IMG/VR virus record: IMGVR_UViG_3300046665_000548
Coordinates: 496,001 to 560,000 of that record
Direction: 5' to 3' (one strand)
DNA length: 64,000 nucleotides
The position numbers and the translations under genes were made by a program. Numbering within the stretch: position 1 is the first letter of the stretch; each line of letters starts with the position of its first letter. Of this stretch, positions 2,930-35,574 are shown one piece after another. Under the pieces are notes generated by a model. That model did no database searches, was not told the origin of the DNA, and worked only from the letters and a program-made list of their open reading frames with translations.

Positions 2930-4324
2930 TTAGTTCATGATCAGGCCGCGATACTTGTCCGCGAACACGTCGAAGTTCTTCATCTTCTGCGTGTCGAACG
3001 GCAGCTTGTGGACCTGGATGGCGGCCTTCGAGCCCATGATGCAGATTTCCGGCTGGAAATTCTCCATGATGAAGGCAAGGAAATGATCCGCTTCCTTGAG
3101 CCATTCGGCGCGATCTGCCGACTGCATCCACTTGGCACCATGCTCGCGCTTGATCTTCTCCACGCGTTCTTTCAACTCGTAGCAGAGCGTCGTGGTCAGA
3201 GCGTAGGCCAGAGAGACCTCGACCTTCTTCGGCATCTTCTTGAGCTTGCCGGAAAGAATGTGATCGGCCTGTGGCAGGTCCTTCGCGATCTTGCGGAACT
3301 CAGTGAACTGGACGCCGATACCGTCGCCAACCGCACCCGAGATCAGGGCGAGCATCACCATGTCCGGAAGGTCTTCGTTCTGGATCAGAATATCCGAAAC
3401 GAATTCCCACGAACGAGGCGTAGCGAAGCCACGTGCAGCCGTACCCGGTTCGAACTCGAACAGGTGGTTCTTGAACGCGGTCAGGTAGCCGACAACCTCG
3501 GAACTGACAGTGTTCAGGAGCGCCCAACGCTGCCAATCATCGAAATCGACGCGCATTTCAAGATGCACGAAACGATTCATGATCGGCGTCGGCATCTTGT
3601 AGGTGACGCCCTTATCGGTGTCGCGGTTGCCCATGCCCATGATGTAGACGAGGTTAGGAACCTCGTACTCACCGAGGCGACGATCCAGAACAAGCTGGTA
3701 CGCTGCGGCCTGCACGGACGGCGGAGCAGAGTTGAACTCTTCCAGAGCCAGGATAGCGCGGGTTTCGCCCTTCACGAGAATGCGGACCTTGCCAGCAACC
3801 GGAGCCGCCTTCGCGGCGTCGGCCTTGAACTCCGCCTCGTCATAGAGAGTGACGACGAACGAATCAAGAGTTTCGCTGTTCGCCTTCACGACCGCATGAA
3901 GCGGACGCTTCGGATCGGCGTTCACTGCGCGAACTTCGATCTTCGGGCTGGTGCAGTAATGCACGCCGTTGGAGCCGACCGGGTTGCCGAAATAGACCGG
4001 GGTATCTTCGGCATCGACCGCGACCACAAAGTTCAGATCGAGATCACGCGGCATGATATACGGGGTAGACCAGCGGACGCCTTCCACACCACCGACCTTG
4101 GTCGGGTAGGGAATGCCGCGAAGGTCGGTCGGGTCCATCTGCGAAAGACGCATATCGATGAACGCCATACGCTCTTCGGTCGCGACCTGCTGAGCAACCT
4201 GAGATTTGGAAATACCGGGCGGACCCCACATGAAGATCGCGCGATTGGTGGGCATCATTGCCCGGATAGCGACTGCGGCTTCGCTTGGCTTAACAGTGAG
4301 CGAATCGACCTTAGCTTTTGCCAT
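2930..4324 (-). CDS. MoxR-like/AAA_5 ATPase with internal insertion
   Basis: Walker A GPPGISKS, DMRLSQMDPTDLRGIP, Walker B LALEEFNS, QAAAYQLVLDRR, NRFVHL, TPRSW. Confidence 0.9.
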   Translation of the reverse strand: MAKAKVDSLTVKPSEAAVAIRAMMPTNRAIFMWGPPGISKSQVAQQVATEERMAFIDMRLSQMDPTDLRGIPYPTKVGGVEGVRWSTPYIMPRDLDLNFVVAVDAEDTPVYFGNPVGSNGVHYCTSPKIEVRAVNADPKRPLHAVVKANSETLDSFVVTLYDEAEFKADAAKAAPVAGKVRILVKGETRAILALEEFNSAPPSVQAAAYQLVLDRRLGEYEVPNLVYIMGMGNRDTDKGVTYKMPTPIMNRFVHLEMRVDFDDWQRWALLNTVSSEVVGYLTAFKNHLFEFEPGTAARGFATPRSWEFVSDILIQNEDLPDMVMLALISGAVGDGIGVQFTEFRKIAKDLPQADHILSGKLKKMPKKVEVSLAYALTTTLCYELKERVEKIKREHGAKWMQSADRAEWLKEADHFLAFIMENFQPEICIMGSKAAIQVHKLPFDTQKMKNFDVFADKYRGLIMN

Positions 4325-27924: not shown

Positions 27925-28000
27925 GGGGATGTAGCTCAATGGTTAGAGCGTCCGCCTGTCGAGCGGAAGGTTGCGGGTTCGAGTCCCGTCATTCCCGCCA
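27925..28000 (+). tRNA. tRNA-Asp(GTC)
   Basis: Acceptor GGGGATG/CATTCCC, anticodon arm TCCGC-CTGTCGA-GCGGA, TTCGAGT loop, encoded CCA. Confidence 0.95.
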
Positions 28001-28001
28001 C

Positions 28002-28076
28002 GCTTCCATCGTCTAGTGGTTAGGACGTTGCCCTCTCAAGGCAAAAACGCGGGTTCGAATCCCGCTGGAAGCACCA
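28002..28076 (+). tRNA. tRNA-Glu(CTC)
   Basis: GCTTCCA/TGGAAGC, TTGCC-CTCTCAA-GGCAA, TTCGAAT loop, CCA. Confidence 0.95.
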
Positions 28077-28090
28077 CAAATTTTGGTTAC

Positions 28091-28168
28091 GGGACGCTCC
28101 TCTAAACGGAATAGGAGCCCTCTTTTTCACAGAGGAGAATGTCGGTTCGAGTCCGACGCGTCCTGCCA
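28091..28168 (+). tRNA. tRNA-Glu(TTC)
   Basis: GGGACGC/GCGTCCT, CCTCT-TTTTCAC-AGAGG, TTCGAGT loop, CCA. Confidence 0.9.
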
Positions 28169-28169
28169 C

Positions 28170-28245
28170 GCATCCATCGGCTAAAGGTAAGGCCGCTCGC
28201 CTTTCAAGCGAGAAATCTAGGGTTCGAGTCCCAGTGGATGCACCA
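28170..28245 (+). tRNA. tRNA-Glu(TTC), imperfect T-stem
   Basis: GCATCCA/TGGATGC, CTCGC-CTTTCAA-GCGAG, CCA; unpaired A28219 in the T-stem. Confidence 0.9.
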
Positions 28246-28594
28246 CTCCCTGCGGCACCATCTCCGTGTGTCCAAAATGTTCCAGCCTGTGACAGCATGC
28301 ACAGAGGGTCATGAGGTTGGCCGGATCATTATTGCTGTGATTTCGATCAATATGATGAACATCCATTTGACACGTGTGTTTAGCAACAAATCCACACTCC
28401 TCGCAGATCATCCCCACTGATTTTCGGTATTTTGAGAAAGTCCTGTAGCCACTTTTCCGGTAGAGGCGGCTGTTACACGTACTACACATGGCACGAAAAG
28501 CACCATTGCCTTTGGGTTTCTGAGGATTTTTACTGCATACGACGCAAGTACCTTGGATGTGGGACGGTTCTGGTTTTCTGTGTTTCCATGTCAT
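28217..28594 (-). mobile_element. Free-standing HNH endonuclease with Zn fingers
   Basis: CVVC, CSTC, CEECG, MDVHHIDRNHSNNDPANLMTLCACCHRLEH; probable start ATG 28594, 5 nt after TATAAATA. Confidence 0.85.
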
Positions 28595-28606
28595 CTTTGT
28601 ATTTAT

Positions 28607-28638: not shown

Positions 28639-28667
28639 CTTGACACTTCTCCGATTCGTGGTAGATT
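28639..28667 (+). promoter_or_regulatory. Early-type promoter
   Basis: CTTGAC-N17-TAGATT. Confidence 0.75.
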
Positions 28668-28689: not shown

Positions 28690-28863
28690 ATGTCTGATTT
28701 TCACACCAATCTTCAAAGCCTTAACATTGGCATGGGTGAAAACAATTATGACCGTTACAAGCTGATCGCCCTCTATAAGAAGGAGATTGGTTCTTCTCCG
28801 AAGCGCGGTACCGCTATCGCGGTCATTGTGCAGGCAATCGTTGACCATCGGCGGGGGCAGTAA
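28690..28863 (+). CDS. Hypothetical protein (57 aa, not in ORF track)
   Basis: GAGGAG SD; MSDFHTNLQSLNIGMG...VDHRRGQ; TAATG overlap with the next gene. Confidence 0.65.
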   Translation: MSDFHTNLQSLNIGMGENNYDRYKLIALYKKEIGSSPKRGTAIAVIVQAIVDHRRGQ

Positions 28864-29225
28864 TGACCAAGATCACCATCGGCTATCACACGCGCCTCTA
28901 CGGGCAGAATTCCGTCAAGGTCACGGGCGGCGCTTTCGGCGGCTCACTCGATCTTGAGACGGCGAATCGTCTCGTCAAGCATCATTTCACCGTCATCGTG
29001 AAGCAGTCCGGCACCCCGGTATTTGTCGATAGGGAGGGCCGTGAGGTCACCCTGTATATCACGGTCGATCCCGGATCAACCGAGGCAGGCAAGCTGGCTA
29101 TTGCGGCGGACCGTGCAGAGCGTGACAATCGGGCGAAGATCGAGGACGAGAAGCGCGCTCGCGTTAATGAGTTGCTCGACGGTATGAGCATGGATGATGC
29201 GTTGAAGCTCCTAGGAGGGGCTTGA
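28863..29225 (+). CDS. Hypothetical protein
   Basis: 120 aa ORF, coupled start. Confidence 0.75.
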   Translation: MTKITIGYHTRLYGQNSVKVTGGAFGGSLDLETANRLVKHHFTVIVKQSGTPVFVDREGREVTLYITVDPGSTEAGKLAIAADRAERDNRAKIEDEKRARVNELLDGMSMDDALKLLGGA

Positions 29226-29249
29226 CATACTCCAAATCTATGGTAGATT
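29221..29249 (+). promoter_or_regulatory. Early-type promoter
   Basis: CTTGAC-N17-TAGATT; predicted +1 at 29256. Confidence 0.8.
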
Positions 29250-29255
29250 GAGTCT

Positions 29256-29436
29256 ATAGGGAAGTCGTTTTAAGGCTTAAAGATTCCGTGCGCGCTACGT
29301 TGTAGCAGACGGCGGCGATGTAGGTGTGAGCGGCCTACCTTCCCTAGCATTCCTGAGTGCAGCTAGCTGACTGGCTGTCGTACGAAAGCTAAACCATAAC
29401 AGCCTCCATGGTTTAGTTGCTGCACTCTGGAATGCT
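29256..29436 (+). ncRNA. Structured ncRNA or 5' leader of unknown family
   Basis: Closing stems TAGGGAAG/CTTCCCTA, AGCATTCC/GGAATGCT, GAGTGCAGC/GCTGCACTC; loop complement GGCTGT/ACAGCC. Confidence 0.7.
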
Positions 29437-29437
29437 C

Positions 29438-29485
29438 CTGAAAGAATAATTTCACTTAGACGTTTCCACTGAAAGAATAGTTTCA
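29438..29485. repeat. Two 17-bp imperfect palindromic direct repeats
   Basis: CTGAAAGAATAATTTCA (29438-54) and CTGAAAGAATAGTTTCA (29469-85). Confidence 0.8.
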
Positions 29486-29487
29486 GG

Positions 29488-29838
29488 ATGACTATGAAGC
29501 GCAAGCCAACGTTCGTATCCTTCTCGCTGAGCGACACCAACGGGCAATACGTCAATGGTGTCGCCATCGAGGTTGACCGCGTTGGCTTTCACGGCTTCTC
29601 GGATGACGGGCTATTGTTCGACATCTATTGGCAGGACGGTTTCGCGGAGCGGCGGGCGCTGAATGGACAGCGTTACGGGAGCTTTGAGATTGGCGAGCAG
29701 AAGGGCACCGTCGTCTCGTTCCTGATCCAGGGCGAATACCCGGCGAACCGTCTGATCACTCGTGAAGAATTTCACCGCATGTTCGGCGTCGAACGTGTTT
29801 GCAACGCCCTCGGGCATTTTACCATGGCGGGGCGATGA
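29488..29838 (+). CDS. Hypothetical early protein
   Basis: 116 aa ORF, first gene of a tightly coupled operon. Confidence 0.7.
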   Translation: MTMKRKPTFVSFSLSDTNGQYVNGVAIEVDRVGFHGFSDDGLLFDIYWQDGFAERRALNGQRYGSFEIGEQKGTVVSFLIQGEYPANRLITREEFHRMFGVERVCNALGHFTMAGR

Positions 29839-30179
29839 CCGTTATTCTCCAAAAGCGTCTCGCTCACAAAGAGTTTCAGACGGAGGTCACGGCTGCTCAG
29901 TGGTCCGACCTCCTTTCTCCTTTTCACGAAGCTACTCGGCACCACACGGCTAATCTTGCCGCTCATGGTTGGGACGTGATCCTTCTCGATCCAGCCTATC
30001 TCTTTGTGGGCTGCCAATGGTATCCCAAGTCGGATTGTTATTTTTTCACGCCGCACGATCCGGGTACTCGCAAGTACACCACGCTTCGGCAGCTTTCTCC
30101 GGAAGAGCATGCTAAGCTCTACCCTACCAAGCTGCTCGATCTTGCTGCTCTCGAAACTCTCTATGGAGAGATCATCTGA
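29835..30179 (+). CDS. Hypothetical early protein
   Basis: ATGA-coupled start at 29835. Confidence 0.7.
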   Translation: MTVILQKRLAHKEFQTEVTAAQWSDLLSPFHEATRHHTANLAAHGWDVILLDPAYLFVGCQWYPKSDCYFFTPHDPGTRKYTTLRQLSPEEHAKLYPTKLLDLAALETLYGEII

Positions 30180-31682: not shown

Positions 31683-32350
31683 ACGAGCTTATCGAGACCA
31701 AAGAACTTGTTTACTCAATCAGACATCCCGTCTCAGGACTGTTCTGGAATGGAAGCACCCACGAGCCCAAATTCTTTCCAAAACCTCACCGATGGGCCAA
31801 GCTATCTGATGTGAAGCGCCGCTATGCGGATTACCTTGTCGCGTTGGAAACCAAGGACGAGGGAACGCGATATAGGCGTCCAGGCGCTTGGGATGACTGC
31901 CCTCCGTATCTGATTCTGGTGACCGAGCAGATCACGTCTACACCGCTGTCGTCAGAATCTTTGTCGCCAATCGACGGGGATAATCTTGTCTTGGCGAAAG
32001 CGAAATCAATCTTATGCGATAACCGCGCCGACTATGACAATTACCATCATCTTGTTCGGACTAGTGGTGCTTCGGCCTACCAGTTCATGGTTCAGCCGAA
32101 ATGGGATTTTCTGCAAACTCTCATCCAAAAGCAAAAAGTCTCTCGGTCCGCGAAGAGAGCATCAACCGAACAAGACGGCGAAACGCTGGTCGATCTAGTT
32201 AAAAAGCTTGGGCATCAGCGCGCCCGAGTAGTCGGCTGGTCGATATTTGTAAAAGATCAAAAAGACTTGCTGATGCTCAAAATGCAGGGGCACGTCGATA
32301 TTGATTACGTCTATGATCTGTTTTCGATGGAAAAAGTTGGTTCCGGTTAG
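31679..32350 (+). CDS. Hypothetical protein with FKL-like C-terminal module
   Basis: 223 aa; ends SIFVKDQKDLLMLKMQG... Confidence 0.75.
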   Translation: MNELIETKELVYSIRHPVSGLFWNGSTHEPKFFPKPHRWAKLSDVKRRYADYLVALETKDEGTRYRRPGAWDDCPPYLILVTEQITSTPLSSESLSPIDGDNLVLAKAKSILCDNRADYDNYHHLVRTSGASAYQFMVQPKWDFLQTLIQKQKVSRSAKRASTEQDGETLVDLVKKLGHQRARVVGWSIFVKDQKDLLMLKMQGHVDIDYVYDLFSMEKVGSG

Positions 32351-32946
32351 GACCGGAACACCTTGACTGGATTACCGCGCTCGATCTGATCGTGCGCTTT
32401 CCAGGCTTCCTCCAGAATAGTGCCGCGATCCATCTCGTTCTTGATCTCCAGAAGCTCTCCTAGACGCTGTACGGCGACCTTTTTGTTCTGGTGCTGAGAT
32501 CGCCCATCGCGCACCACGACGCGCATGCCGCTCGGCACATGCGTGGCTCTCACCGCGCTATCCGTAACGTTCTGGTGCTGCCCGCCAGGGCCACCAGCGC
32601 GAAATGCTTCGAAGCGGATGTCCTCAGGCTTGATCGTCTGCGTTGCAGGTGCGTTTGGAAGCTCGGTGATGGAAACGAACCAATTCTTCCGCTTATGTCC
32701 CGGACGTATGGTGCTTTGTGCGATCCACTGGACCGAACCAAGCCATCCTTGAGCGAAGCTACTGGAGCTTTCGCCTTCAAGCATGACCACGACGGAACCC
32801 GGCCCGTGCTTGTCCGGTGCCTTGCCCTCAACTACGGAGGTCGTCAGGTCATTCTCGCTGGCATCCTTACAGAGCCTCTTTACGATCTCTGCCACGGCAA
32901 GACGGCATTCGGCCGGGCCACGCCCGCTTGTGATGATCAGGTTCAT
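32347..32946 (-). CDS. prfH: Peptide chain release factor homolog H
   Basis: ITSGRGPAECRLAV, GSVQWIAQSTIRPGHKRKNWF, GGPGGQHQNVTDSAVRATH. Confidence 0.93.
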   Translation of the reverse strand: MNLIITSGRGPAECRLAVAEIVKRLCKDASENDLTTSVVEGKAPDKHGPGSVVVMLEGESSSSFAQGWLGSVQWIAQSTIRPGHKRKNWFVSITELPNAPATQTIKPEDIRFEAFRAGGPGGQHQNVTDSAVRATHVPSGMRVVVRDGRSQHQNKKVAVQRLGELLEIKNEMDRGTILEEAWKAHDQIERGNPVKVFRS

Positions 32947-34255: not shown

Positions 34256-34429
34256 TTACCTTGGTGCATTGCGAACATCCTCAATTGTCATCACGTCGAT
34301 CCATTGAAAATTCCAACGCAGAAAAGCTTTCTCATCATCGGTCATGTTCCGAATGTTCATCCATTCCTCGGCCGCATCTTTATCTTCGACCAGCACGATG
34401 GGAGACACGCCCAGACTGAGGACACGCAT
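34256..34429 (-). CDS. Hypothetical protein
   Basis: TAATG-coupled to the rtcB stop. Confidence 0.55.
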   Translation of the reverse strand: MRVLSLGVSPIVLVEDKDAAEEWMNIRNMTDDEKAFLRWNFQWIDVMTIEDVRNAPR

Positions 34430-35574
34430 TACTTGTCCTTCCAACTTTTGTTCTTCTCGGCCGCTGCTGACTGCGCCGTCTTGAACGTCACTAGCGGTCG
34501 GAAGGTAGCGACGACCTTGACCAGACCGAACGCCACTAGATCATTGATCACGCGGTCGATATTCTTGTACGCGTCGCCTGCCTCTTCCATCAACAGATTA
34601 CGATCCTCGCAAACAACAATGCCTCCGAAAGGATTTTTGGCCATCTTTTCGCGAACCGATTTGACGTTCTGCACGCGGCCATGCATGGACCCGCGATCAT
34701 ATTTGCGCCCAGCACCGTGAGCCAATGACGTAAGCGAATCAGCGGTAGCCGTATCAAGTGGCTGCACGAGATAAGACAGTGTTTCCCGAGACCCAGGAAT
34801 CGGCACAAGTCCGCGATCAGAAGGAGCCGCGCCTTTGCGATGTAGCACGCGCTCATCTTCGGTAAGTTCGAGGAAGTTATGACTGAGATCGGCAATTGGT
34901 GTGATCACGCCACGGGCCGCTTCCGCTGCTCGCTCAGCGATGATCTGGCGGTTTAGTTCTGCCCAATCCACCGCGTGTTTGTGGTCAGTCAGGTAGCGCC
35001 CACCATCTTCGGAATCTACCTGAAGGGTCGTTACGTTTTTTGCAAGGAGGCTTTCCAAAACAGAATAGCCAAGAGCCCGCGACCCGGAGTGGACCAACAC
35101 GAACACCATGTCGGCGTCGAGGTTCGCTTTTGAGGCTGCTTCTTTGTCAAAAATCTCATGGATGGCTTGCAGTTCGCAAAAATGGTTTCCGCCGCCGATG
35201 GTCCCAAGGCCCCCATCGTACGGAGATGGACGAAACCCCCATTGTTCAGTTCGGTGACGGTGATCGCCACTCCAAGGTTCGTCCAGGTCCTTTAGACGTT
35301 CCGCAACCTTATCTGCTCGAAGCTTTCGGTGCTTCAGGTCGGTCATGAAGAGACCCATCCCGCAGCCAATATCGGAACCGACGATGCGTGGATGAATTTG
35401 CGTGCTCAGCATCCCACAACCCACCGGGCCATATTTTCCCGGATGCAAATCAGGCATGGCGGCCACCGCCTGAACCGTCTCGGTATCGGCAAGCTGCTCA
35501 AGCTGGCGCTCGGCGGCCCCTTCGATCCAGGCGCGGTCAGAGAAAAATCGGTTAATTGGTGCTCGTTGATTCAT
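34429..35574 (-). CDS. rtcB: RtcB-family RNA ligase, PrfH-coupled (RtcB2) type
   Basis: AMPDLHPGKYGPVG, GSDIGCG, GTIGGGNHFCE, VHSGSR, HRKGA, LAHGAGRK, EEAGDAYK. Confidence 0.93.
   Translation of the reverse strand: MNQRAPINRFFSDRAWIEGAAERQLEQLADTETVQAVAAMPDLHPGKYGPVGCGMLSTQIHPRIVGSDIGCGMGLFMTDLKHRKLRADKVAERLKDLDEPWSGDHRHRTEQWGFRPSPYDGGLGTIGGGNHFCELQAIHEIFDKEAASKANLDADMVFVLVHSGSRALGYSVLESLLAKNVTTLQVDSEDGGRYLTDHKHAVDWAELNRQIIAERAAEAARGVITPIADLSHNFLELTEDERVLHRKGAAPSDRGLVPIPGSRETLSYLVQPLDTATADSLTSLAHGAGRKYDRGSMHGRVQNVKSVREKMAKNPFGGIVVCEDRNLLMEEAGDAYKNIDRVINDLVAFGLVKVVATFRPLVTFKTAQSAAAEKNKSWKDK

What the first reader, a model, noticed from the sequence alone, without database searches (positions are those of the whole stretch)
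29256..29436. Unrecognised ~180-nt two-domain RNA with a kissing-loop three-way junction
Seen: it starts at the predicted +1 of a consensus early promoter. Domain 1 is closed by TAGGGAAG(29257-64)/CTTCCCTA(29339-46) and contains internal hairpins (GCTAC/GTAGC, CCGT/ACGG, GTAGG/CCTAC). Domain 2 has a 17-bp stem (29346-63/29419-36, one U-U mismatch) leading to two hairpins, TAGCT/AGCTA and AACCAT/ATGGTT. Their loops carry GGCTGT (29373-78) and ACAGCC (29399-404), which are perfectly complementary. Loop-loop kissing on a three-way junction is typical of riboswitch aptamers and some ribozymes. It matches no family I recognise and lies ahead of an operon of unknown early genes.
Basis: partly seen in the sequence, partly recalled or inferred. 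Interest (0 to 1): 0.72.

Follow-up and report, generated by a model that had tools for sequence, protein, structure and literature searches.

The report
Two conserved small RNA modules, huge phage
Directly behind a genuine early promoter of a 608-kb freshwater or soil phage lie two separate, tRNA-sized, folded RNA elements that are far better conserved than the genes around them and match no known RNA family; their function is unknown, and they are not the single two-domain riboswitch-like RNA first proposed.

Summary
The "two-domain RNA" is better read as two independent modules, D1 (29256-29346) and D2 (29346-29436). In one related phage contig they lie 227 nt apart. In another sample D2 occurs between unrelated flanks. 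The modules differ from relatives at 8 of 575 positions, against 108 of 714 in adjacent coding DNA. D2 is exceptionally stable (z -5.96). D1 alone is not (z -1.75), but one of its hairpins carries a U-A to C-G compensatory change in three samples. The 6-nt loop-loop complementarity exists (chance about 0.02). It could not be tested because D2 does not vary, and the minimum-energy fold competes with it. Neither module matches Rfam, tRNA, YrlA or hammerhead models, and the genome encodes no reverse transcriptase, so a retron is unlikely. Each module is single-copy in its genome. Two syntenic relatives lack them. My best guess (0.4) is that these are co-transcribed small RNAs at the edge of a tRNA island, released through their closing helices. 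Four of this phage's own tRNAs sit inside similar long helices. A cis-regulatory leader role remains a live rival.

The parts
29222..29249 (+). Early sigma-70-type promoter with extended -10 (TTGACA, 16 nt, TGgTAGATT). The stop codon of the upstream gene lies inside the -35 hexamer.
   Evidence: It is one of 20 strict genome-wide copies with conserved flanks. A near-identical copy lies at 28640-28667.
29256..29346 (+). Module D1: a 91-nt RNA that begins at the predicted +1. An 8-bp closing helix (29257-64/29339-46) encloses three arms: 29269-73/29277-81; 29286-89/29309-12 with a distal hairpin 29294-98/29302-06; and 29320-24/29334-38. The topology is a cloverleaf.
   Evidence: The block 29256-29342 is conserved as a unit in X6 with 3 differences. 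X5 shows only 2 differences over 29255-29404. T29296>C together with A29304>G turns a U-A pair into C-G in X4, X5 and X6. D1 alone has z -1.75.
29346..29436 (+). Module D2: a 91-nt RNA. A 17-bp closing helix with one U-U mismatch (29346-63/29419-36) closes a three-way junction with hairpins 29364-68/29387-91 (18-nt loop) and 29392-97/29408-13 (10-nt loop).
   Evidence: z -5.96. The block 29349-29436 is identical (0 differences) in X6 and X7 and also in X4, in three different flank contexts.
29373..29378 (+). GGCUGU in the loop of the first D2 hairpin. It is the proposed kissing partner of 29399-29404.
   Evidence: Chance of a complement of at least 6 nt between these two loops is about 0.021. 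No covariation is available.
29399..29404 (+). ACAGCC in the loop of the second D2 hairpin. The loop also carries CCUCC, an anti-Shine-Dalgarno-like sequence.
29436..29488 (+). Remaining leader. It holds two copies of the palindromic 16-mer TGAAAGAATA(A/G)TTTCA (29439-54 and 29470-85, 31 nt apart). UCCUGAAA (29436-43) can pair with UUUCAGGA (29481-88), which would cover the ribosome-binding site.
   Evidence: these are the only two copies in the genome. predicts the hairpin, but z is only -1.19. The segment is not conserved with D2 in X4, X6 or X7.
29494..29838 (+). First gene downstream: an ORFan of 114 aa (116 aa if counted from the ATG at 29488). No terminator lies between D2 and this gene.
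   Evidence: no terminator-like site; only one homologue, 72% identity; no family.
28863..29225 (+). Upstream 120-aa gene. Its family is widespread in jumbo phages and serves as a synteny anchor.
27925..28245 (+). tRNA island (Asp, Glu, Glu, Glu) about 1 kb upstream, on the same strand.

Best explanation
The stretch holds two independent, tRNA-sized (~90 nt) structured RNA modules, laid head to tail at the +1 of an early promoter on the downstream edge of a tRNA island. The early transcript starts with D1, runs through D2 without a terminator, and continues into small ORFan genes.

Each module is closed by a helix formed from its own 5' and 3' ends. I infer that these helices act as processing or stability determinants. 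In particular, D2's 17-bp duplex could be a substrate for host RNase III. If so, the modules would be released as discrete stable small RNAs that act in trans, and the downstream mRNA would gain a new 5' end.

Shown: the promoter family; the helices; block-wise conservation that coincides with the helices; the separability of D1 and D2; one compensatory pair; no match to any known family.

Inferred: transcription, processing, stability, and action in trans. The molecular target is unknown.
For: 1. Modularity and conservation.
- In X6, D1 (29256-29342, 3 differences) and D2 (29349-29436, 0 differences) are 227 nt apart.
- X7 carries D2 alone between unlike flanks. X4 and X5 carry them adjacent.
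- Flanking coding DNA in the same contigs is only about 81-85% identical.
- Pooled differences are 8/575 in the modules against 108/714 in coding DNA (Fisher p 1e-20).

2. Block ends lie at the bases of the closing helices, within 0-4 nt.

3. A compensatory U-A to C-G change in a D1 hairpin appears in three samples.

4. In this genome, the consensus promoters either have leaders of 11-22 nt or precede RNA genes. Examples are tRNA-Phe at G000 284769-284839, and the promoter at 253628(-), which is followed by two other closing-helix modules and then a tRNA cluster.

5. Four of the phage's own tRNAs sit inside leader/trailer inverted repeats that lengthen the acceptor helix to 17-23 bp: Lys-CUU, Pro-UGG and two Gln-CUG. 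Their total spans are 94-110 nt with 56-62 nt inside. D2 has the same dimensions: 91 nt, 17 bp, 55 nt inside.

6. D1 has tRNA cloverleaf topology. Its 3' part is collinear with the variable region, T-stem (GUAGG/CCUAC, identical) and acceptor strand of the phage's tRNA-Gln(CUG). This similarity is weak (p about 0.13).

7. No plausible ORF lies on the + strand. The 90-aa minus-strand ORF cannot be conserved, because the modules separate in X6.
Against: - There are no expression data. No RNA run was shown to hold the element.
- The genome encodes no RNase III, so processing would depend on the host.
- A 17-bp helix is short for a classical RNase III site.
- There is no terminator or other defined 3' end.
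- I found no antisense target of 14 nt or more in the phage genome.
- D1 alone is not thermodynamically exceptional.
- Near-identity across diverged phages could reflect recent horizontal transfer rather than selection on an RNA.
- Only one compensatory event is known. The minimum-energy fold of D1 can also absorb it by shifting a bulge.
Confidence: 0.4

Rival explanations
1. The modules are cis-acting leader elements of the early mRNA. Each would regulate or protect the transcript it sits in. Possible roles are a riboswitch or protein-binding translational operator, a put-like processive antitermination RNA acting on RNA polymerase, or a 5' stabiliser or processing site like the RNase III sites of the T7 early region.
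For: - No terminator lies between D2 and the ORF.
- D2 is followed by a Shine-Dalgarno-like sequence and then, where the sequence extends far enough, an ATG. This holds in three different contexts: 48-57 nt away in the window, about 17-25 nt in X7, and an SD about 22 nt away in X4, whose loose end stops before any start codon.
- UCCUGAAA, immediately 3' of D2, can pair with the ribosome-binding site of ORF 29494.
- The position directly at +1 of an early promoter is the classical place for antitermination or stabilising RNAs (established knowledge of HK022 put and lambda nut).
- Nucleotide-level invariance is typical of ligand- or protein-binding RNA cores.
Against: - D1 and D2 are separable, and the downstream sequences differ between contexts, so there is no conserved expression platform.
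- The only relative holding a homologue of the downstream gene (L006), and the other syntenic relative (L007/L009), both lack the element.
- The SD-sequestering hairpin is not significant (z -1.19).
- Similarly arranged but unrelated modules precede a tRNA cluster, where translational control is meaningless.
- In a densely packed phage genome, almost any intergenic element sits just upstream of a start codon.
Confidence: 0.3
2. This is a DNA-level feature: small palindromic mobile or recombination cassettes (MITE-like, or modular shuffling joints) that move between related phages in a hyperplastic early region. The RNA fold would be incidental.
For: - An identical 88-nt D2 lies between unlike flanks in X7, X4 and X6 while neighbouring genes are 15-19% diverged.
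- The arms of D2 look like 18-bp terminal inverted repeats.
- The region is plastic. An HNH endonuclease gene lies at 28217-28596 on the minus strand, with a LAGLIDADG gene at the same place in a relative.
- Gene content after the 120-aa gene differs between relatives.
- The multi-copy promoter itself could act like a PeSL-type recombination cassette (PMC2839356, PMC4122927).
Against: - D1 and D2 are each single-copy in 608 kb, by nhmmer and by covariance models.
- There is no clear target-site duplication.
- D1 has no long terminal repeats.
- The compensatory change argues for selection on pairing.
- A probable C-to-U change at 29348 in X7 (preceding letters ...AGT) would keep a G-U pair only on the + strand RNA (inferred from a loose-end consensus).
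Confidence: 0.15
3. D2 (long terminal stem plus internal multiloop, 91 nt) is a Y RNA that partners the phage's own Ro60/Rsr protein.
For: - The genome encodes a TROVE-domain protein.
- Y RNAs are 80-130 nt, with a long stem formed by the two ends and a large internal loop (PMC4201824).
- RtcB lies about 5 kb downstream of D2: the 381-aa minus-strand ORF at 34429-35574, inferred from synteny with the RtcB genes called in L006 and L007.
Against: - The Ro60 gene is about 279 kb away. A YrlA-like RNA with T-arm, hairpin and D-arm in the permuted order lies about 1 kb upstream of it on the same strand (RF02553, 30.7 bits, E 8e-5). The same library gives D1 and D2 no YrlA hit up to E=10.
- The GNCGAAN0-1G motif near the 5' end is absent. 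The closest string is UACGAAAG, in a loop (PMC4201824).
Confidence: 0.05
4. The element has no function. It is chance secondary structure in a spacer.
For: D1 alone is not exceptional. An 8-bp complement within 181 nt is not rare (about 0.25 expected, my arithmetic).
Against: - D2 has z -5.96.
- The modules are about 10 times better conserved than adjacent genes in four independent samples.
- There is a compensatory pair.
Confidence: 0.03

Closest known systems
Small stable RNAs encoded within phage tRNA gene clusters (T4 'species 1' and 'species 2' RNAs, rnaC/rnaD; from my own knowledge, not checked here)
   Same: They are tRNA-sized or somewhat larger structured RNAs of unknown function. They are co-transcribed with or next to a phage tRNA cluster from early promoters and released by processing.
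   Different: There is no sequence relationship. D1 and D2 lie about 1 kb downstream of the tRNAs, behind two protein genes and their own promoter, and lead into protein genes. Processing is not shown.
tRNA precursors enclosed in long leader/trailer helices, as found in this same genome
   Same: D2 has the same dimensions: 17-23 bp closing helix, 55-62 nt inside, and 91-110 nt in total. D1 shares the cloverleaf topology and a T-stem identical to that of tRNA-Gln(CUG).
   Different: Neither module is a tRNA. There is no Rfam tRNA hit up to E=10, no ARAGORN call even at relaxed thresholds, and no T-loop, D-loop or CCA.
YrlA / bacterial Y RNAs (RF02553; PMC4201824)
   Same: The size is similar, the ends pair into a long stem, and the middle is structured. 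The phage encodes Ro60.
   Different: There is no model hit, no GNCGAAN0-1G motif and no T/D arms. The Ro60 gene is about 279 kb away, and it has its own YrlA-like neighbour.
RNase III processing hairpins of the T7 early region (established knowledge)
   Same: These are intergenic duplexes inside a polycistronic early transcript, with no terminator, and they can stabilise or separate RNAs.
   Different: T7 sites are simple hairpins with an internal bubble. D2 closes a three-way junction and is far more conserved than its neighbours. Cleavage is untested.
PeSL promoter/stem-loop cassettes of T4-type phages (PMC2839356, PMC4122927)
   Same: They comprise an early promoter plus a stem-loop in a hyperplastic region of small ORFans. 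Gene content is shuffled between close relatives at these points.
   Different: PeSLs are short repeats present many times per genome. Here only the promoter is multi-copy, while D1 and D2 are single-copy and about 90 nt each.
Three-way-junction riboswitch aptamers and hammerhead ribozymes with loop-loop contacts
   Same: A three-way junction carries two hairpins whose loops could pair (the purine-riboswitch or hammerhead style of tertiary contact).
   Different: There is no Rfam hit. The hammerhead core is absent: the sequence has CUGAGUG rather than CUGANGA. There is no conserved expression platform, and the downstream genes are not conserved.

Membership tests
Any Rfam 15 family | Covariance-model score at or above the gathering threshold | tested here: not met
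   the whole window yields only three tRNAs; over 29100-29600 up to E=10, only four chance-level hits of 9.7-17.3 bits, against gathering scores of 42-53.
tRNA | Cloverleaf with canonical D-loop, T-loop and anticodon loop, detectable by the tRNA covariance model or ARAGORN | tested here: not met
   Only the permissive mitochondrial mode at 80% threshold gives overlapping nonsense calls.
YrlA / Y RNA | Match to RF02553 (T-arm, acceptor-like hairpin and D-arm inside a long stem) | tested here: not met
   One search gives no hit. As a positive control, the same model detects a YrlA-like element next to the phage Ro60 gene.
YrlA / Y RNA | GNCGAAN0-1G motif near the 5' end (PMC4201824) | tested here: not met
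   the motif is absent from both 5' strands. The nearest string is UACGAAAG in a D2 loop.
YrlA / Y RNA | Encoded within about 4 kb of the Ro60 gene on the same strand (PMC4201824) | tested here: not met
   the TROVE gene is at G000 about 245.3-246.7 kb on the minus strand. D2 is at 525.3 kb on the plus strand.
Riboswitch | Conserved aptamer coupled to an expression platform (terminator or SD-sequestering helix) upstream of a functionally coherent gene set | tested here: inconclusive
   The core is invariant. The downstream sequences and genes differ between contexts. A relative with the homologous gene lacks the element. The SD-pairing helix is not significant. Ligand binding cannot be tested with these tools.
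Hammerhead and other small self-cleaving ribozymes | Conserved catalytic core (for hammerhead, CUGANGA ... GAAA around a three-way junction) | tested here: not met
   no ribozyme family up to E=10; the sequence has CUGAGUG.
Retron ncRNA (msr-msd) | Adjacent reverse transcriptase, and a1/a2 pairing between the 5' end of msr and the 3' end of msd | tested here: not met
   there is no RVT_1 anywhere in the genome. The ends of D1 and D2 each pair within their own module. The modules separate in X6.
PeSL-type mobile regulatory cassette | Short promoter plus stem-loop unit repeated many times in one genome | tested here: not met
   The promoter is repeated, but D1 and D2 are single-copy.
MITE-like palindromic element | Terminal inverted repeats, target-site duplication, and multiple copies | tested here: not met
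   D2 has inverted-repeat arms, but it is single-copy and has no clear duplication.
RNase III processing site | Duplex of about two helical turns that the enzyme cleaves | not testable with these tools
   The helix has 17 bp and one mismatch, and could stack on a junction hairpin. No phage RNase III is encoded.

The most novel reading that the evidence does not exclude
D1 and D2 are founding members of new families of tRNA-sized structured RNAs that are exchanged as discrete units among huge freshwater or soil phages. D2's long helix plus two hairpins locked by a 6-bp loop-loop contact would mimic the tRNA acceptor arm and elbow, or form a new ligand-binding or catalytic core. It would act as a decoy or effector against a host RNA-recognising enzyme or defence system.
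Probability: 0.15. Interest if true: 0.8.

Novelty: new variant of a known kind. Interest (0 to 1): 0.5.

Why it matters
Huge phages carry dozens of tRNAs and other translation-related RNAs, yet their other non-coding RNAs are almost unexplored. These two RNA-like modules are invariant or nearly so across phages whose neighbouring genes differ by 15-19%. They move as discrete units and match no described family.

If they are stable RNAs, they add new families to the phage RNA repertoire. They also point to a processing logic, long closing helices, that is shared with a subset of this phage's tRNAs. If they are cis elements, they would be a new early-gene control device.

For the scan itself the lesson is practical. 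Two adjacent structured modules should not be merged into one "two-domain" RNA without comparative evidence.

Tried and rejected
Searches for homologues that found nothing:
- Exact-pattern scans for D2 and D1 in IMG/VR and in JGI metagenome contigs (cap exhausted).
- GTDB genomes gave a single chance hit inside a coding region, L011.
- blastn against GenBank phages gave only the neighbouring 120-aa gene or a 19-nt chance hit.
- nhmmer and blastn-short against the own genome and eight related loci.
- Single-sequence covariance models R1 (D2) and R2 (D1) against the own genome and three IMG/VR relatives.

Synteny route:
- The only homologue of the downstream ORF (P0002, L006) and the closest homologue of the upstream gene (P0004, L007/L009) are syntenic, with radical-SAM and tRNA genes and RtcB. 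Neither has the element.
- L008 also lacks it.
- The radical-SAM protein found no IMG/VR relatives.
- Cluster look-ups did not reach the X6 phage.

Protein clues: the flanking proteins have no Pfam or PHROG family and no informative Atlas neighbours.

Identities rejected:
- tRNA.
- Retron.
- Y RNA.
- A coding region, either the minus-strand 90-aa ORF or any small + strand ORF.
- A trans-acting antisense RNA against the phage's own genes with 14 nt or more of complementarity.
- An intrinsic terminator.

The similarity of D1 to tRNA-Gln is collinear but not significant (p about 0.13). I keep it only as a lead.

Full report
**Context**

The window is positions 496001-560000 of a 607,744-bp IMG/VR virus record, judged complete, with 52% G+C. 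ARAGORN finds 57 tRNAs and a permuted tmRNA in it. The finding lies about 1 kb downstream of a four-gene tRNA island at 27925-28245.

The local order on the + strand is:
- a minus-strand HNH endonuclease gene;
- a promoter at 28640;
- a 57-aa ORF and a 120-aa ORF;
- a promoter at 29222;
- the element;
- a run of small ORFans.

**Observation**

The promoter TTGACA-16-TGgTAGATT (29222-49) is not a lone consensus match. The genome has 20 strict matches with conserved flanks, gCTTGACA...TGGTAGATTG. My arithmetic expects about one by chance. A looser pattern gives 49. Most copies are followed within 11-22 nt by a ribosome-binding site and start codon. The promoter at 29222 is unusual in having about 238 nt before the first gene.

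Several other long "leaders" in this genome turn out to be RNA genes. One promoter drives tRNA-Phe (284769-284839). The promoter at 253628(-) is followed by two closing-helix modules (about 86 nt and 139 nt) that Rfam does not recognise, and then by a tRNA cluster.

Folding results:
- The 181 nt fold at -77 kcal/mol with z -4.92.
- The signal comes almost entirely from the second half. D2 has z -5.96 and D1 has z -1.75.
- The opposite strand folds nearly as well (z -4.36).

**The key result: two modules, not one RNA**

The element region shares 17-35% of its 31-mers with six public runs from six studies, four freshwater or lake metagenomes and two runs labelled with an organism name. A seventh run, a soil metagenome, held 10% of the words of the wider 2-kb stretch. 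I laid four of these runs on 28900-29900.

- X6: a 148,961-bp contig carries the upstream gene (52 differences and 3 gaps over 315 nt). After 327 other letters comes 29256-29342 (3 differences). After 227 other letters comes 29349-29436 (0 differences). After 224 other letters comes the downstream ORF (15/99 and 13/128 differences).
- X7: 29349-29436 is present with 0 differences between flanks unlike ours on both sides.
- X4: 29275-29436 is contiguous (3 differences) and is followed by a third kind of flank.
- X5: 29255-29404 is present with exactly two differences, while a coding piece from the same run differs at 24/129 positions.

Pooled, the modules differ at 8/575 positions against 108/714 in coding DNA (Fisher p about 1e-20).

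The conserved blocks begin and end within 0-4 nt of the bases of the two closing helices. D1 (29256-29346) and D2 (29346-29436) are therefore separate units. They are adjacent in our phage and in X4 and X5, but not obligatorily so.

**Structure support**

That is hard to get by chance, and I estimate roughly 0.4% for the second change to land on the partner with the right base.

This favours the local hairpin, and with it a cloverleaf-like D1: an 8-bp closing helix, a 2-nt linker, and three arms. The thermodynamic optimum is a different, long irregular hairpin, at -33.3 against -22.6 to -26.3 kcal/mol. That fold can also absorb the changes by shifting a bulge. The D1 fold is therefore only partly settled.

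D2 never varies, so neither its hairpins nor the GGCUGU/ACAGCC contact can be tested. The complementarity has a chance probability of about 0.02. The minimum-energy fold instead extends the second hairpin to 11 bp and uses GGCUG in a small hairpin.

The letters before 29349 in X7 read ...AGT, against AGC here. If these are homologous, a C-G pair becomes U-G, which is tolerated only on the + strand RNA. This is a hint, not a result.

**What it is not**

- No Rfam family.
- No tRNA, even at relaxed ARAGORN thresholds.
- No hammerhead core.
- Not a retron: the genome encodes no reverse transcriptase.
- Not coding.
- Not a repeat: nhmmer and covariance models find each module only once in 608 kb.
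- Not present in the two syntenic relatives I could fetch, where the neighbouring genes abut directly.

Because the phage encodes a Ro60/TROVE protein, I tested the Y-RNA idea. A YrlA-like element lies about 1 kb upstream of that gene on the same strand (RF02553, 30.7 bits, E 8e-5), with the characteristic T-arm, hairpin and D-arm order. D1 and D2 give no YrlA hit, lack the GNCGAAN0-1G motif (PMC4201824) and lie about 279 kb away.

**What it resembles**

A scan of the genome for long inverted repeats found D2 among a small set of 83-110-nt elements with closing helices of 14-23 bp. Four of them are bona fide tRNAs: Lys-CUU, Pro-UGG and two Gln-CUG. In these, leader and trailer pair to extend the acceptor helix by 9-15 bp. 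D2 has the same overall dimensions, but its 55-nt interior is not a tRNA body.

The 3' third of D1 is collinear with the variable region, T-stem (identical GUAGG/CCUAC) and acceptor strand of the phage's tRNA-Gln(CUG). The alignment score is not significant (p about 0.13).

Together with the position at the edge of a tRNA island, this suggests RNA genes that share a processing logic with the phage's tRNAs. It fits less well with an mRNA aptamer.

**Mechanism**

Best explanation (0.4): the early promoter fires at about 29256. D1 and D2 fold co-transcriptionally. Their closing helices serve as processing or stability determinants, with host RNase III on the D2 duplex as the obvious candidate, since the phage encodes none. 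The modules would then accumulate as small stable RNAs acting in trans, while transcription continues into the ORFans. Only the promoter family, the folds, the conservation and the modularity are shown. The rest is inference.

Main rival (0.3): cis-acting leader elements, such as a riboswitch or operator, put-like antitermination, or a stabiliser.
- For: there is no terminator. A ribosome-binding site or start codon lies within about 20-55 nt after D2 in three contexts. A possible SD-sequestering helix links 29436-43 and 29481-88.
- Against: there is no conserved platform or gene association, and the element is absent from a relative that has the gene.

Other rivals:
- A DNA-level mobile or recombination cassette (0.15) fits the identical copies in different flanks and the plastic, endonuclease-rich neighbourhood. 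It does not fit the single-copy status or the compensatory pair.
- Y RNA: 0.05.
- Chance: 0.03.

**Novelty and score**

The two modules are real, conserved and unassigned. They would constitute new RNA families within the loosely known kind "small structured RNAs of phage tRNA/early regions".

The specific claim that made the finding attractive was a kissing-loop three-way junction of riboswitch or ribozyme type in a single 180-nt RNA. Its single-RNA part is not supported, and its kissing-loop part is untestable with the data available. I score interest at 0.5.

Noticed in passing
G000 137435-137534 (+), 231446-231555 (-), 252624-252717 (-), 252720-252817 (-); outside the window: Four canonical tRNAs (Lys-CUU, Pro-UGG and two Gln-CUG) are enclosed in leader/trailer inverted repeats. 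These extend the acceptor helix by 9-15 bp, to 17-23 bp in total. This is an unusual precursor architecture that suggests duplex-dependent processing.
   Followed up: partly
G000 about 253590-253361 (-), downstream of the promoter at 253628 (-); outside the window: Two further unrecognised modules lie in tandem between a consensus promoter and a tRNA cluster. One is about 86 nt with a 10-bp closing helix. The other is 139 nt with a 22-bp closing helix. The layout matches D1-D2, but the sequences are unrelated and Rfam gives no hit.
   Followed up: partly
G000 about 245311-246729 (-) and 247694-247757 (-); outside the window: The phage encodes a Ro60/TROVE-domain protein. About 1 kb upstream on the same strand lies a sub-threshold YrlA-like RNA (RF02553, 30.7 bits) with the T-arm, hairpin and D-arm order.
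   Followed up: partly
window 29439-29454 and 29470-29485: Two copies of the palindromic 16-mer TGAAAGAATA(A/G)TTTCA lie 31 nt apart just before the start of ORF 29494. They are the only two copies in the genome. They could be a protein operator or small RNA hairpins, and the outer halves can pair to cover the ribosome-binding site.
   Followed up: partly
window 28217-28596 (-): A free-standing HNH endonuclease gene lies between the tRNA island and the promoter at 28640. A relative has a LAGLIDADG gene at the equivalent place, which marks a hotspot for mobile endonucleases.
   Followed up: partly
window 28091-28168 (+): ARAGORN calls a 78-nt tRNA-Glu(UUC) with the anticodon at position 36, which the Rfam tRNA model does not report. 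It may be an aberrant or intron-bearing tRNA.
   Followed up: no
G000 4091-4178 and 4180-4256 (+); outside the window: Two adjacent tRNAs with a CUA anticodon, called 'tRNA-Pyl' by ARAGORN, are candidate amber suppressors. This raises the question of TAG recoding in part of the genome.
   Followed up: no
G000 576377-576796 (+); outside the window: A permuted (two-piece type) tmRNA gene carries the tag ANDNVAVSEYALAA. To my knowledge the two-piece form is typical of alphaproteobacteria, so this would fit an alphaproteobacterial host.
   Followed up: no
L006 5374-5491: In the related JGI contig, a tRNA-like sequence with acceptor and T-arm but a roughly 35-nt insert lies between two tRNAs. ARAGORN does not call it.
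   Followed up: no
window 32347-32946 (-) and 34429-35574 (-); L007 7063-7662 and 9582-10411: An RNA-repair-like neighbourhood (RtcB plus an RF-1/PrfH-like protein and R2K-family proteins) lies a few kb downstream. It is conserved in the relatives.
   Followed up: no
G000 about 298130-298030 (-); outside the window: Another strongly structured stretch (z about -6.5 with mononucleotide shuffles) lies in the long leader behind the promoter at 298323 (-).
   Followed up: no
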